DNA of 63,242 nucleotides, counting the filler, from Octopus bimaculoides (taxonomy: Eukaryota): the NCBI RefSeq assembly GCF_001194135.2. It is 6 parts of 6 records of this genome, joined end to end, with 100 filler letters (N's around TTAATTAATTAA, not from the genome) between each part and the next. Parts side by side here need not be neighbours in the genome. Positions count along the whole stretch, not along the records: positions 58,755 to 61,395 come from NW_026348505.1; 5 more parts are not named here. One strand, written 5' to 3'. Positions within the stretch are counted from its first letter, which is position 1, and every line of letters starts with the position of its first letter. This document shows, piece by piece, positions 58,755 through 61,395 of the stretch. The notes beneath the pieces were generated by a model that searched no databases, was not told the origin of the DNA, and saw only the letters and a program-made list of their open reading frames with translations. A program made the position numbers and the translations under genes.

Positions 58755-59850
58755 GCAATGCAGTTAATCAAAGTATGCACCTAAATTATCAACACAATTT
58801 TGCCTTTTTACTGGTAGCTCATTTATGCTGGCACCAAAGAAATCTGGAGAGCAAGAGGTGATGAAATCACAAAAGGATGCTTTTGCATCTTATTCAGATT
58901 TCAAGGTTTTTCCTTGCAAAATGTTGTCTAGAACCTGGAATATGTGATAGTCAGTTGGTGCAAAGTCTGGTGAATATGGTAGATGACAGAGTACTTCCAA
59001 GTTCAATTCCTGTAACTCGAGTAGTTTTCTTTGTGCAACATGTGGTCAAGCATTTTCTTGCAAGGGAATTGGCCTGTCTCTGTTGACCAATCTCAGTTGT
59101 TTAATTCCAAGTTCACCCATCATTTCATCCACTTGGTTGATGTATACATCCACTGTAATGGACTCATGAAGCTGTAGTGGATGACACCAACACTGGACCA
59201 CCAAACAGATGCCATTACCTATTTTTGGTGAATATTTCTTTCTGGGGTTGTGTTTTGGAACTTCTTCTCTATCCAAACACCATGCAAAACATTGTTGAAA
59301 AGAATCCATTTTTCTTGACACGTAACAATACGATGGAAAAATGGTTCACTTTTATGCCGTGAACAGCAAAGAACAGCAAGTTTCAAGACGACATGTCATT
59401 TGATGCTCGTTCAGTTCATGTGACACCCACTTGTCCAGCTTCTTTATCTTTGCTGATTTATTTCAGATGAACCAATGCAGTTGGAATTGAAACATCAAAC
59501 CTTGCAGTTAACACACTCGTAGTTTGAGCTGTATCCATTTTCACTAGTTTCCAGCTCATCCTTATCCACCTTGGTCTCGGGTCTACCATGGGGCTGATTT
59601 TCAAGAGTAAAGTCACCAGACCGGAACTTCTCAAACATACAGTGCACTCATTCGCCACTTCTTCACCAAACACCTCATTGATGTTTCAAGCTGTCTGAGA
59701 TAAATTGGTTCCATGACAGAACTCATATTCATAAACAACATAAATCTTTGGTCTATCCATGGGTTCACACAAATTGATTTACAAGAGAAAACTCACAACA
59801 TAACCAGACACCATGAATTGCATTTCGAAAGGTGGTGATGTAACTCTTCA
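58755..59850 (-). mobile_element. Mariner (cecropia/Hsmar1-like) with decayed transposase (ATG at 59760, stop about 58764)
   Basis: MDRPKIYVVYEYEF...NINEVFGEEVANECTV, WVSHEL, RIVTCQEKWI, LQENA*PH, HLPYSPDFAPTDYHIF, GAYFD*; TIRs not visible. Confidence 0.9.
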
Positions 59851-59858
59851 TAACTACC

Positions 59859-59940
59859 AGTGCCATGGCTGAGTGGTTAAGGTAATTGGCTGCTAATCCA
59901 TTGGGGTCTCCGCCCATGAGTTCAAGTCTCATCCTTGTCA
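59859..59940 (+). pseudogene. tRNA-Ser(GCT)-like pseudogene or SINE head
   Basis: tggctgagtggttaagg (D arm), ctgctaatcca (GCT anticodon loop), long variable arm ggggtctccgccc, gagttcaagtctc (T arm), 3' ccttgtca; acceptor stem does not pair and anticodon stem is damaged. Confidence 0.75.
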
Positions 59941-59974
59941 ATTACATTTTGCATCAGGGAGGCAGTGATAAGTG

Positions 59975-60255
59975 ACTGACACCTTTGGCAATATACCATG
60001 CTTGAGAAGACCTATCAAGCCAAGTGAGATCATAGTTGTGGCCAATGGCAGTGTGTCATAAGTGGCACCTGTACTGGTGGCACATAAAAAGCACCCACTA
60101 CACTCTTGGACTGGTCGGCGCTAGGAAGGGCGTCCAGCTGTAGGAACCATGTCAGATCAGATTGGAACCTGATGCAGCTCCCCAGCTTACCAGTTTTCAG
60201 TCAAACCGTCCAACCCATGCCAGCATGGAAAACAGGCATTAAATGATGAGGATAA
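59975..60255 (+). mobile_element. LINE 3'-UTR-like repeat directly downstream of the tRNA-Ser-like head
   Basis: ggtggcacataaaaagcacccactacactc...taggaagggcgtccagctgtag...gtccaacccatgccagcatggaaaac...ttaaatgatgaggat ends in a degenerate (GAT)n tail. RTE origin recalled, not verified. Confidence 0.55.
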
Positions 60256-60330
60256 TATTTATGTACTACCCCGCTCTTTCTTGACGTTTAGGATTTTCAG
60301 CTCTACCATTAATTTTATATAAATATATGC

Positions 60331-60365
<35 letters not shown>

Positions 60366-60383
60366 TTTGTTTTCTATTCTTAG

Positions 60384-60652
60384 CCACAGTATTTGGTGAA
60401 GGTGTTTATTTTGCCAAAGACATCCGTTATTCTGCACGTGATACCTATTCTACTCCTGACCATTACGGAATAAAGAAAATATACAAATGCAGTGTTCTTG
60501 TGGGAAAAGTGATGCAAGGACAACATGGATTAAAAGTTTTACAGGATTCTTACAATTCTGCTGTTGATAATATTCAAAGACCCAGTATTTATGTTATTTT
60601 TCATGACTCTCAAGCATATCCTAATTACTTGATTACATTCTCTAATTATTGA
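60384..60652 (+). CDS. Terminal coding exon of a mono-ADP-ribosyltransferase PARP (PARP10/12/14/15-like catalytic domain, C-terminal half)
   Basis: Acceptor tcttttgttttctattcttAG, phase 1, open 88-codon frame to TGA: (A)TVFGEGVYFAKDIRYSARDTYSTPDHYGIKKIYKCSVLVGKVMQGQHGLKVLQDSYNSAVDNIQRPSIYVIFHDSQAYPNYLITFSNY*. Has FG.GVYFA, YS...YS, V.VG, DN...PSI.VIF, QAYP.YLI.F. No stops or frameshifts, unlike all neighbouring TE frames. Confidence 0.93.
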
Positions 60653-60692
60653 ATATAATTGGAATTCATAAAATACATATGATGTAAACAGA

Positions 60693-60698
60693 AATAAA
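60693..60698 (+). terminator. Candidate polyadenylation signal of the PARP gene (alternative at 60799-60804)
   Basis: AATAAA 41 nt after the stop codon. Confidence 0.4.
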
Positions 60699-60905
60699 TT
60701 TAACAAAGGAAAGACAAAGGAAAAACAAAACAAAAGAAAGACACAGAAAATACAGGAAATTCTCTAATTCTAGGTGCAATCCTATGGTCTTTTCTAAGAA
60801 TAAAACTATTCAAAACAATATTTTTCTATCATTCACACAATATTGTTGTCATTTTTTATCTTTTTTACTTGAGAAAGAATTATTGCTAAATATTAAAATA
60901 CATGA

Positions 60906-61185
60906 AGATGCATGGCTCAGTGGTTAAAGCATCGGGCTCACAATCATGAGGTAATGAGTTCAATTCCCAGGCCAGGCTGTGTGTTATTACATCACTGGTG
61001 CCAAGCTGTATTGGCCTTTGCCTTTCCCTTGGATAACATTGGTGGTGTGGAGAGAGGGGAGGCTGGTATGGATGGGTGACTGCTGGTCTTCCATAAACAA
61101 ACCTTACCTGGACTTGTGCCTTGGAGGAGAACTTTCTAGGTGCAATCCCATGGTCATTCATGACTGAAAGGGGTCTTTACCCTTT
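60906..61185 (+). mobile_element. tRNA-derived SINE family E
   Basis: A-box tggctcagtggttaaag, B-box gagttcaattccc; distinct body actgctggtcttccataaacaaccttacctggacttgtgccttggagg. Confidence 0.8.
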
Positions 61186-61204
61186 TGATATAAAATGCAG
61201 GCTG

Positions 61205-61395
61205 AAGGGGGCAAGCCAGCAGAACCATTAGCATGTTGGGCAAAATGCTTAGCAGCAATCCCTCTGGCTTTACGTTCTGAGTTCAAATTCCATCGAGGTT
61301 GACTTTGCCTTTCATCCTTTTGGGGCCTATAAAATAAGTACCAGTTGAACACTGGGGGTCAATATAATCAACTCACCCGCTCCCATGAAATTGCT
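61205..61395 (+). mobile_element. Repeat family F copy
   Basis: cagcagaaccattagcatgttgggcaaaatgcttagc...tacgttctgagttcaaattcc...actttgcctttcatcc...aagtaccagttgaacactgggggtcaa. Confidence 0.78.

What the first reader, a model, noticed from the sequence alone, without database searches (positions are those of the whole stretch)
60384..60652. Orphan terminal exon of a mono-ART PARP missed by the ORF track, with a shortened loop and an E>N change
The only intact host coding exon found. The third triad position reads PS-I-YVIF (Ile, no catalytic Glu), as in mono-ADP-ribosylating PARP10/12, implying MARylation rather than PARylation. The splice site falls in the Ala codon of (GKN)A, as I recall for PARP14/15. 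Relative to PARP14 (GNHSLIVPPSKNPQNPTDLYDTV, from memory) the loop is about 8 aa shorter (GQHGLKVLQDSYNSAV), and the normally conserved AYPEY is AYPNY. These PARPs are innate-immunity genes in vertebrates, so a divergent lineage-specific paralogue could have altered substrate recognition.
Basis: partly seen in the sequence, partly recalled or inferred. Interest (0 to 1): 0.7.

Follow-up and report, generated by a model that had tools for sequence, protein, structure and literature searches.

The report
Octopus PARP14-like gene's last exon
This is a real last coding exon of an octopus PARP14/15-like mono-ADP-ribosyltransferase gene, but its short loop, Asn-for-Glu change and Ile are shared by every Octopus paralogue retrieved, so it is an ordinary member of an already annotated gene family.

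Summary
Window 60384-60652 (+) is an 89-codon terminal exon. It has an AG acceptor at 60382-60383, a split Ala codon, a TGA stop at 60650-60652 and an AATAAA at 60693. It encodes the C-terminal half of a PARP catalytic domain (Pfam PARP 37 bits; best solved relatives PARP14, PARP15 and PARP10, E about 1e-18).

The exon is 75-87% identical to annotated "PARP14-like/PARP15-like" proteins of Octopus bimaculoides, O. sinensis and O. vulgaris, and about 66% identical to those of Argonauta. The same acceptor is used in their gene models.

All 16 Octopus copies compared have the 15-residue loop and AYPNY. Argonauta has the short loop too. Ile is the commonest residue at the third triad position across 268 related domains. 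Only one residue of the window peptide (R18) is not seen in some other Octopus paralogue.

"Orphan" is not shown. The piece reaches only 1.6 kb upstream, and the preceding intron is 1.6-4.9 kb in relatives. No retrieved protein contains this exact exon. Its 3' flank is 97% identical to a 1-kb contig lying between assembly gaps in an O. bimaculoides PARP cluster. Whether the copy is expressed or a pseudogene cannot be decided here; dN/dS is about 1 on tiny counts.

Verdict: a new member of a known kind, of low interest.

The parts
60335..60362 (+). (TA)14 microsatellite at the 3' end of the last intron
   Evidence: The same (TA)n lies before the acceptor in paralogous loci. O. bimaculoides contigs break at this repeat.
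60366..60383 (+). Polypyrimidine tract and AG splice acceptor (TTTGTTTTCTATTCTTAG)
   Evidence: TTCTTAG|CC is identical in four aligned copies (window, two O. bimaculoides copies, one O. sinensis copy). The junction coincides with the exon 2/3 boundary of annotated P0161 and P0157.
60384..60652 (+). Terminal coding exon (phase 1: CC completes an Ala codon; 88 further codons; TGA stop) encoding strands beta4 to beta9 of a PARP14/15-like ART domain
   Evidence: Strand assignment comes from the AlphaFold model of the closest complete relative, P0161 (pLDDT 94.8, TM 0.9 to PARP15/PARP14).
60407..60409 (+). Codon of the triad Tyr (Y8, GVYFA). The other NAD-site residues are Y15/S16 (60428-60433) and Y21 (60446-60448)
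   Evidence: These align without gaps to PARP14 GTYFA...NYSANDTYS. The PARP14 residues Y1633, Y1640, S1641 and Y1646 are named as NAD-pocket contacts in PMC9189837.
60518..60556 (+). Shortened beta6-beta7 loop (GQHGLKVLQDSYN), 8 residues shorter than in human PARP14
   Evidence: One search shows the gaps of 5+3. One search gives the strands that flank it. One search gives the loop-length census: mode 22-23 residues; 15 residues in 30 of 268 domains, including all Octopus and Argonauta copies.
60587..60589 (+). Ile codon (I68) at the third triad position, equivalent to PARP1 catalytic Glu, PARP15 L659 and PARP10 I987
   Evidence: One search aligns PSIYV with PSLFV. PMC12572374 identifies L659 as homologous to the PARP1 Glu. 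PMC9189837 Table 1 lists the triads.
60623..60625 (+). Asn codon (N80) in AYPNY, where most relatives have Glu
   Evidence: E 191, D 28, N 16 of 268 domains; 13 of the 16 N are Octopus paralogues; all 16 Octopus copies compared have N; Argonauta has E or Q.
60653..60698 (+). Start of the 3' UTR, with a polyadenylation signal AATAAA at 60693-60698
   Evidence: The 3' flank aligns at about 90% with paralogous loci, which carry AATATA at that spot.
58767..59765 (-). Context only: a degraded mariner (Mos1-type) transposase remnant inside the last intron
   Evidence: Pfam Transposase_1 (E=2e-8) and HTH_48 hits in different frames. Fragments were located.
59860..60265 (+). Context only: a tRNA-headed SINE copy inside the last intron
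   Evidence: 25 copies at 71-88% identity in 94 kb of octopus loci. The tRNA-like head repeats at 60911. No intact tRNA was found.

Best explanation
The segment is the genuine last coding exon of one copy of an octopod tandem family of PARP14/15-like macro-PARP genes. In complete relatives the ART (catalytic) domain is encoded by a three-exon cassette. That cassette is spliced behind exons for RRM-like and two to five macro domains.

This exon supplies strands beta4 to beta9 of the domain. It carries the triad Tyr (GVYFA), the nicotinamide-pocket Tyr/Ser/Tyr, the beta6-beta7 loop, the acceptor loop with Ile in place of the PARP1 catalytic Glu, and the C-terminal strand AYPNYLITF. The triad His (LWHGT) would come from the preceding exon, which lies beyond the piece.

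Inference: with His, Tyr and Ile and no catalytic Glu, the enzyme would transfer single ADP-ribose units, as PARP10, PARP14 and PARP15 do, rather than build chains.

The short loop and the Asn are traits of the whole Octopus family, and the short loop is shared with Argonauta. They are not traits of this copy.

Shown: homology, exon boundaries, conserved catalytic residues within the exon, and family-wide distribution of the features. Inferred: splicing to upstream exons, expression, and mono-ART activity.
For: Identity: Pfam PARP scores above its cut-off. The best solved relatives are PARP14, PARP15 and PARP10. The exon is 75-87% identical to NCBI-annotated 'mono-ADP-ribosyltransferase PARP14-like/PARP15' proteins of three Octopus species and 66-68% identical to Argonauta.

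Exon structure: P0161 maps to three exons in O. bimaculoides, and the third starts at the same split Ala codon. The acceptor TTCTTAG|CC and the stop position are conserved in aligned paralogous loci. AATAAA lies 41 nt after the stop.

Architecture of relatives: two to five macro domains plus PARP; RRM_PARP14_3 and Macro in long forms and in the gene just upstream of the cassettes in L002. The first cassette exon has its own acceptor and encodes (L)IPDTWSPM, as in the long forms.

Catalytic residues: Y8, Y15, S16, Y21 and D74 are retained, as are all 40 sites invariant among the 16 Octopus sequences.

Fold: the closest complete cassette, P0161, models at pLDDT 94.8 with TM about 0.9 to the PARP15 and PARP14 ART domains despite the short loop.

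Family expression: a PARP14-like isoform was detected in the O. vulgaris skin-mucus proteome (PMC11431876).
Against: No transcript or spliced-read evidence is available for this copy. No upstream exon lies within the 1.63 kb visible.

No retrieved protein contains this exact exon; the maximum is 86-87% identity. It is therefore unannotated, in an assembly gap, or from a species without annotation in these collections.

dN/dS against the three nearest copies is 0.54-1.09 on only 3.5-8 synonymous differences. The same is true between annotated paralogues, so constraint on this copy is not demonstrated. With only one private residue, the test of whether changes avoid invariant sites has no power.

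The 3' flank is 97% identical to a contig in the O. bimaculoides cluster, but the 5' flank is not collinear with the contig before the gap. Assignment to that locus is therefore uncertain.
Confidence: 0.7

Rival explanations
1. The exon is a relic: a duplicated terminal exon or a member of a pseudogenised cassette in a segmentally duplicated, transposon-rich cluster. Its frame is still open only because the duplication or a gene conversion is recent.
For: dN/dS is about 1 against the nearest copies. The exon is a mosaic of states seen in other paralogues with one private change, as expected after recent duplication or conversion. Mariner and SINE insertions sit directly upstream. The duplicated units include flanking SINEs. 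No annotated protein contains the exon. With about 18 nucleotide differences from the nearest copy, an open frame is not improbable by chance (my rough estimate, about 0.4).
Against: The acceptor, stop and poly(A) signal are all intact. All family-invariant residues are kept. Transposons in introns are normal in octopus genes. dN/dS is about 1 between annotated, presumably functional paralogues too. PARP14 ART domains are reported to evolve under positive selection (PMC13224862).
Confidence: 0.25
2. One reading: a specially divergent, lineage-specific paralogue whose shortened loop and E>N change give this gene a substrate recognition different from its relatives.
For: Relative to human PARP14 the loop is 8 residues shorter and E is N. 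In PARP15 the beta6-beta7 loop contributes to the dimer interface and to shaping the acceptor site (PMC12572374).
Against: Both features are present in all 16 Octopus paralogue sequences compared, and the short loop is also in Argonauta. Fifteen-residue loops occur in 30 of 268 related domains. The E position is D, N, A, Q, K, S or T in 29% of domains. The window peptide has a single private residue, R18, at a variable site.
Confidence: 0.04
3. A chance open frame, or a PARP domain carried by a transposon, virus or retrocopy rather than a spliced host gene.
For: The surroundings are rich in transposon remnants.
Against: E-values of 1e-18 to 1e-42. Homology starts exactly at a conserved intron-exon junction, which excludes a retrocopy. 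The mariner remnant is on the opposite strand and separated from the exon by a SINE.
Confidence: 0.01

Closest known systems
Octopus 'protein mono-ADP-ribosyltransferase PARP14-like / PARP15(-like)' genes: O. bimaculoides XP_052829825.1 and the 184-aa 'PARP15' model P0161; O. sinensis XP_029633869.1 and XP_036364582.1; O. vulgaris CAI9716753.1
   Same: 75-87% identity over the exon. Same split-Ala acceptor, same 15-residue loop, same AYPNY and same stop region. Ile at the third triad position in 15 of the 16 copies compared and Val in one (P0004). The DNA aligns at 88-91% through the exon and into the intron and 3' UTR.
   Different: No retrieved protein is identical; the best is 86-87%. There is one private residue (R18). 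AATAAA replaces AATATA at the poly(A) signal.
Human PARP14 (ARTD8) and PARP15 (ARTD7) ART domains
   Same: These are the best solved-structure matches (E about 1e-18). The NAD-pocket residues Tyr, Tyr-Ser and Tyr are conserved, as is the Asp that aligns with the PARP15 dimer salt-bridge residue D665. A hydrophobic residue replaces the catalytic Glu. Relatives have the macro-domain architecture. The closest complete relative models with TM about 0.9.
   Different: Ile instead of Leu at the third triad position. The beta6-beta7 loop is 8 residues shorter. N replaces E in AYPEY. Identity is about 45%.
Human PARP10 (ARTD10)
   Same: H-Y-I type third triad residue (I987), mono-ADP-ribosylation by substrate-assisted catalysis (PMC9189837), and a strong sequence match (E=6e-17).
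   Different: PARP10 lacks macro domains (RRM and UIM instead, PMC9189837 Table 1). The matched region is 8 residues longer than in the window.

Membership tests
PARP catalytic (ART) domain, Pfam PF00644 | Profile match above the curated gathering score | tested here: met
   37.4 bits against a cut-off of 26.7 for the 88-aa peptide alone. It is the only PARP hit in a six-frame scan of the piece.
PARP14/15-like (clade 3, macro-PARP) mono-ART | ART domain closest to PARP14/15 rather than to the PARP1 or tankyrase types | tested here: met
   The top PDB sequence hits are PARP14, PARP15 and PARP10. The closest complete relative models with TM 0.89-0.92 to PARP15 and PARP14.
PARP14/15-like (clade 3, macro-PARP) mono-ART | Triad His (HGT motif) for NAD+ binding | not testable with these tools
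   It is encoded by the preceding exon, which is not on the piece. LWHGT is invariant in all octopod relatives.
PARP14/15-like (clade 3, macro-PARP) mono-ART | Triad Tyr and nicotinamide-pocket Tyr/Ser/Tyr | tested here: met
   Y8, Y15, S16 and Y21 align without gaps to PARP14 Y1633, Y1640, S1641 and Y1646 (residue roles from PMC9189837).
PARP14/15-like (clade 3, macro-PARP) mono-ART | Non-Glu hydrophobic residue at the third triad position (mono-ART signature) | tested here: met
   I68 (60587-60589) aligns with the PARP14 Leu. Census of 268 domains: I 125, M 96, V 18, L 16, E 6.
PARP14/15-like (clade 3, macro-PARP) mono-ART | Macro domains N-terminal to the ART domain in the same protein | not testable with these tools
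   They would lie off the piece. Long octopus relatives have two to five macro domains, some with RRM_PARP14_3. A macro-containing gene lies directly upstream of the ART cassettes in O. bimaculoides L002.
Octopod PARP14-like ART cassette family | Terminal exon that starts in the Ala codon after GKN, with the conserved acceptor TTCTTAG|CC | tested here: met
   exon mapping; four-way DNA alignment.
Octopod PARP14-like ART cassette family | 15-residue beta6-beta7 loop and AYPNY C-terminal strand | tested here: met
   all 16 Octopus sequences have both. Argonauta has the loop (14-15 residues) but E or Q.
Functional (expressed, active) mono-ADP-ribosyltransferase gene | Transcription, correct splicing and NAD-dependent mono-ADP-ribosylation | not testable with these tools
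   No transcriptome or read data can be reached. dN/dS is uninformative. Only family-level protein evidence exists (PMC11431876).

The most novel reading that the evidence does not exclude
The octopod-wide 8-residue shortening of the beta6-beta7 loop, together with the Octopus-wide Glu-to-Asn change in the last strand, may have changed how these ART domains dimerise or shape their acceptor site. In human PARP15 this loop engages the activating dimer interface. In that case a tandemly expanded set of at least eight Octopus ART cassettes would work with a different activation or target-selection mode from vertebrate PARP14/15. This would be a property of the clade, not of this exon.
Probability: 0.15. 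Interest if true: 0.35.

Novelty: new member of a known kind. Interest (0 to 1): 0.12.

Why it matters
It matters little beyond annotation. The exon adds one more copy to a tandem PARP14-like family that NCBI already annotates in three Octopus species. It also points to terminal exons that are lost in assembly gaps next to a (TA)n repeat, which has produced at least one chimeric gene model in the O. bimaculoides reference. Expansion of macro-PARPs fits the accepted view that PARP14-type genes duplicate and evolve quickly in host-virus conflicts (PMC13224862). The clade-wide short loop could be of interest to PARP structural biologists, but nothing here shows a functional consequence.

Tried and rejected
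1. A word-index protein search with the 89-aa peptide alone found only three unnamed fragments. The exhaustive representative search and two profile searches were needed. Every listed hit of the first profile search was at most 350 aa and the known long forms were absent, so a second search with long forms was run and all C-termini were re-compared.

2. An exact look-up of the 50-aa ORF product found nothing on record, so the source contig or species could not be identified.

3. I tried to place the window in the O. bimaculoides gap at L002 14505-14631. The 3' flank is 97% identical from the gap edge. The 5' flank is not collinear with the contig before the gap (about 70% over about 60 nt). 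The assignment is left open.

4. An early reading that one O. bimaculoides cassette was 100% identical to an O. sinensis protein was an artefact. The file L002.fa also held L003. This was corrected.

5. dN/dS and a test of whether private changes avoid invariant sites both lacked power.

6. Alternative use of tandem ART cassettes as mutually exclusive 3' ends was considered. The O. sinensis isoforms X2, X3 and X4 retrieved share one C-terminus, which gives no support, so the idea was not pursued.

7. ARAGORN found no tRNA. The one Rfam hit (Plastid-ycf2, 33 bits against a cut-off of 65.7) lies in a SINE head and is taken as chance.

Full report
THE SEQUENCE

On the + strand, bases 60386-60649 translate without a stop to an 88-residue peptide: TVFGEGVYFAKDIRYSARDTYSTPDHYGIKKIYKCSVLVGKVMQGQHGLKVLQDSYNSAVDNIQRPSIYVIFHDSQAYPNYLITFSNY. 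A TGA stop follows at 60650-60652. The two bases before it (CC, 60384-60385) complete a split Ala codon. They follow an AG at 60382-60383, a pyrimidine tract (TTTGTTTTCTATTCTTAG) and a (TA)14 run at 60335-60362. The frame is closed about 20 codons upstream, and what lies between is only microsatellite and pyrimidine tract. An AATAAA sits 41 nt after the stop. The bacterial-type ORF list shows only a 50-aa GTG-started tail, which is why the exon looked 'missed'.

WHAT THE PEPTIDE IS

The peptide alone passes the Pfam PARP gathering score (37.4 bits against 26.7). Its best solved relatives are the catalytic domains of human PARP14 (E=2e-18), PARP15 (1e-17) and PARP10 (6e-17), followed by ZAP/PARP13 and PARP12.

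The ungapped part of the PARP14 alignment lines up window residues with the PARP14 residues that PMC9189837 names as the nicotinamide-pocket contacts:
- Y8 with Y1633
- Y15/S16 with Y1640/S1641
- Y21 with Y1646

I68 (PSIYVIF) aligns with the Leu of PARP14 PSLFVAF. That is the position of PARP15 L659, which PMC12572374 states is homologous to the PARP1 catalytic Glu. The alignment has 5+3 gap columns in the loop, and N80 aligns with the E of AYPEY.

RELATIVES

An exhaustive search of 1.84 billion cluster representatives gave 2015 hits. The top ones are 74-85% identical over all 88 residues. Exact look-up names them:
- 'protein mono-ADP-ribosyltransferase PARP14-like' of Octopus bimaculoides (XP_052829825.1)
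- 'protein mono-ADP-ribosyltransferase PARP14-like' of O. vulgaris (CAI9716753.1 and others)
- 'PARP14-like' and 'PARP15' of O. sinensis (XP_036364582.1, XP_029633869.1)
- about 65%-identical proteins of Argonauta hians

Two profile searches added more copies. All O. sinensis copies lie on one chromosome record, and so do all O. vulgaris copies. The long forms carry two to five macro domains plus the PARP domain. Some also carry PARP14-type RRM modules. That is the PARP14 architecture. No retrieved protein is more than 86-87% identical to the window exon.

GENE STRUCTURE

I fetched the loci of three relatives. The 184-aa O. bimaculoides model P0161 maps to three exons. The third begins at the same split Ala codon (L001 12993-13259). 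The window aligns to that locus at 91% from 37 nt inside the intron, through the exon, and 330 nt into the 3' flank.

A four-way DNA alignment covered the window, two O. bimaculoides copies and one O. sinensis copy. It shows the acceptor TTCTTAG|CC identical in all four, and the stop at the same place in three.

The first exon of these 'mini-gene' models has its own AG acceptor 27 nt before the annotated ATG. It encodes (L)IPDTWSPM in frame, the same sequence that precedes MGD(K/E)EL in the long macro-PARPs. The three exons are therefore a 3' cassette of a longer gene, not a stand-alone gene.

The intron before the terminal exon is 1.6-4.9 kb in the three loci. The piece shows only 1.63 kb upstream and holds no remnant of the earlier exons. 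Absence of upstream exons on the piece is therefore expected and does not make the exon an orphan.

ARE THE FLAGGED FEATURES SPECIAL?

They are not. I aligned all retrieved homologues to the 88 query positions, giving 268 complete domains.

| Feature | Census in 268 domains |
|---|---|
| Third triad position | I 125, M 96, V 18, L 16, E 6 |
| Position of N80 | E 191, D 28, N 16, others 33 |
| Loop between G40 and Y56 | mostly 20-24 residues; 15 residues in 30 domains |

Thirteen of the 16 Asn belong to Octopus paralogues.

In a direct alignment of 16 Octopus and three Argonauta sequences:
- Every Octopus copy has the 15-residue loop and AYPNY.
- Argonauta has the short loop (14-15 residues) with E or Q.
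- All 40 sites invariant among the Octopus copies are kept in the window.
- Only one window residue (R18, at a variable site) is not found in some other paralogue.

The short loop therefore predates the Octopus-Argonauta split, and the Asn is a trait of the Octopus copies.

STRUCTURE

The window has only half a domain, so I modelled the closest complete cassette, P0161, which is 86% identical over the exon. The model has pLDDT 94.8 and pTM 0.90. It superposes on the PARP15 and PARP14 ART domains with TM 0.89-0.92.

Counting strands in the model, the shortened segment is the beta6-beta7 loop (window residues 45-57). The Ile sits at the start of beta8, after the beta7-beta8 'acceptor loop'. N80 lies in the last strand, beta9. 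D74 is in the beta8-beta9 turn, six residues after the Ile, as D665 is after L659 in PARP15.

PMC12572374 reports that PARP15 is active only as a dimer held by an R576-D665 salt bridge. It also reports that the beta6-beta7 loop engages that interface and helps set up the acceptor site. The Arg (GFNRSY) and the Asp are conserved in the octopus family. A shorter beta6-beta7 loop could in principle alter this. That is speculation at the level of the clade.

IS THIS COPY ALIVE?

This is undecided.

Evidence for a live copy:
- The acceptor, stop and poly(A) signal are intact.
- Every invariant residue is kept.
- A PARP14-like isoform was detected in the O. vulgaris skin-mucus proteome (PMC11431876).

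Evidence against, or neutral:
- dN/dS against the three nearest copies is 0.54-1.09, but rests on 3.5-8 synonymous differences. It is equally high between annotated paralogues.
- PARP14 ART domains are reported to be under positive selection (PMC13224862).
- With one private residue, no constraint test has power.

I put about 0.7 on a functional terminal exon and 0.25 on a recently duplicated or converted relic.

WHERE IT COMES FROM

The species could not be fixed. Window 60791-61395 is 97% identical (12 substitutions and one 9-nt indel) to L002 14632-15227. That match starts exactly at the edge of an N gap in O. bimaculoides CM046601.1.

This contig is a 1-kb island between two gaps. It lies about 4 kb downstream of intact first and second ART-cassette exons, and no terminal exon is assembled for them. 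NCBI's model XP_052829825.1 bridges to the next cassette and contains intron read-through, so it is chimeric.

The contig before the gap ends in the same (TA)n. Beyond that it is only about 70% similar to the window over about 60 nt, and it lacks the window's SINE and mariner. The window may be that missing exon in another haplotype or a sister species. It may equally be a recent duplicate. I leave this open.

SURROUNDINGS

The visible part of the intron holds a degraded mariner transposase on the minus strand (about 58767-59765; Pfam Transposase_1 and HTH_48 in different frames). It also holds a high-copy tRNA-headed SINE (59860-60265; 25 copies in 94 kb of octopus loci). More SINE-like units follow the 3' UTR and are shared with paralogous loci. 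No tRNA gene is present, and no credible Rfam family.

VERDICT

The interpretation that this is an orphan or unusually divergent paralogue is not supported. It is one more copy of a tandem, already annotated octopod PARP14-like family, and it carries the family's standard sequence features. It is a new member of a known kind and of low interest.

Noticed in passing
window 58767-59765 (minus strand): A degraded Mos1/mariner-type transposase, with fragments in at least two reading frames and with stops. Pfam gives Transposase_1 E=2e-8 and a weak HTH_48. No copy occurs in the 94 kb of octopus loci fetched.
   Followed up: partly
window 59860-60265, 60905-61160 and 61195-61395: tRNA-headed SINE copies. 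The first has 25 copies at 71-88% identity in three fetched octopus loci. The downstream units are shared at 92-99% with paralogous PARP loci, so the duplicated unit included them. ARAGORN calls no tRNA. A sub-threshold Rfam 'Plastid-ycf2' hit (60910-60974, minus strand) lies in a SINE head and is taken as chance.
   Followed up: partly
window 60335-60362; L001 12154-12956; L002 14505-14631: The (TA)n run next to the acceptor coincides with contig breaks (N gaps) at the same spot in two paralogous O. bimaculoides loci. Terminal ART exons or their upstream introns are therefore prone to drop out of that short-read assembly.
   Followed up: partly
L002 10001-27118 (O. bimaculoides CM046601.1:198,328,789-198,345,906): NCBI model XP_052829825.1 (238 aa) looks chimeric. 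It joins exons 1-2 of one ART cassette, intron read-through (GEYIIIIIIIIHPPSILA), part of exon 2 of the next cassette, and that cassette's terminal exon, all across assembly gaps.
   Followed up: partly
L001 9974-10000; L002 9974-10000; L003 17729-17755: The 184-aa 'PARP15' models start at an internal Met. An AG acceptor and in-frame (L)IPDTWSP lie just upstream, as in the long macro-PARPs. Several macro-only models in O. vulgaris and O. bimaculoides lack an ART domain. Together these suggest that the annotations split single macro-PARP genes.
   Followed up: partly
window 60386-60649 compared with 16 Octopus paralogues: The window peptide is a mosaic. Every residue but R18 occurs in some other paralogue at that position, which hints at recent duplication or gene conversion within the cluster.
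   Followed up: no
P0001, P0002 and P0003 (unnamed metagenome or Logan fragments): ORF-style fragments from unidentified eukaryotic DNA begin just before the same (A)T-x-[FY]-G point, with residues that look like a translated pyrimidine tract. This suggests the intron position is conserved outside octopods.
   Followed up: no
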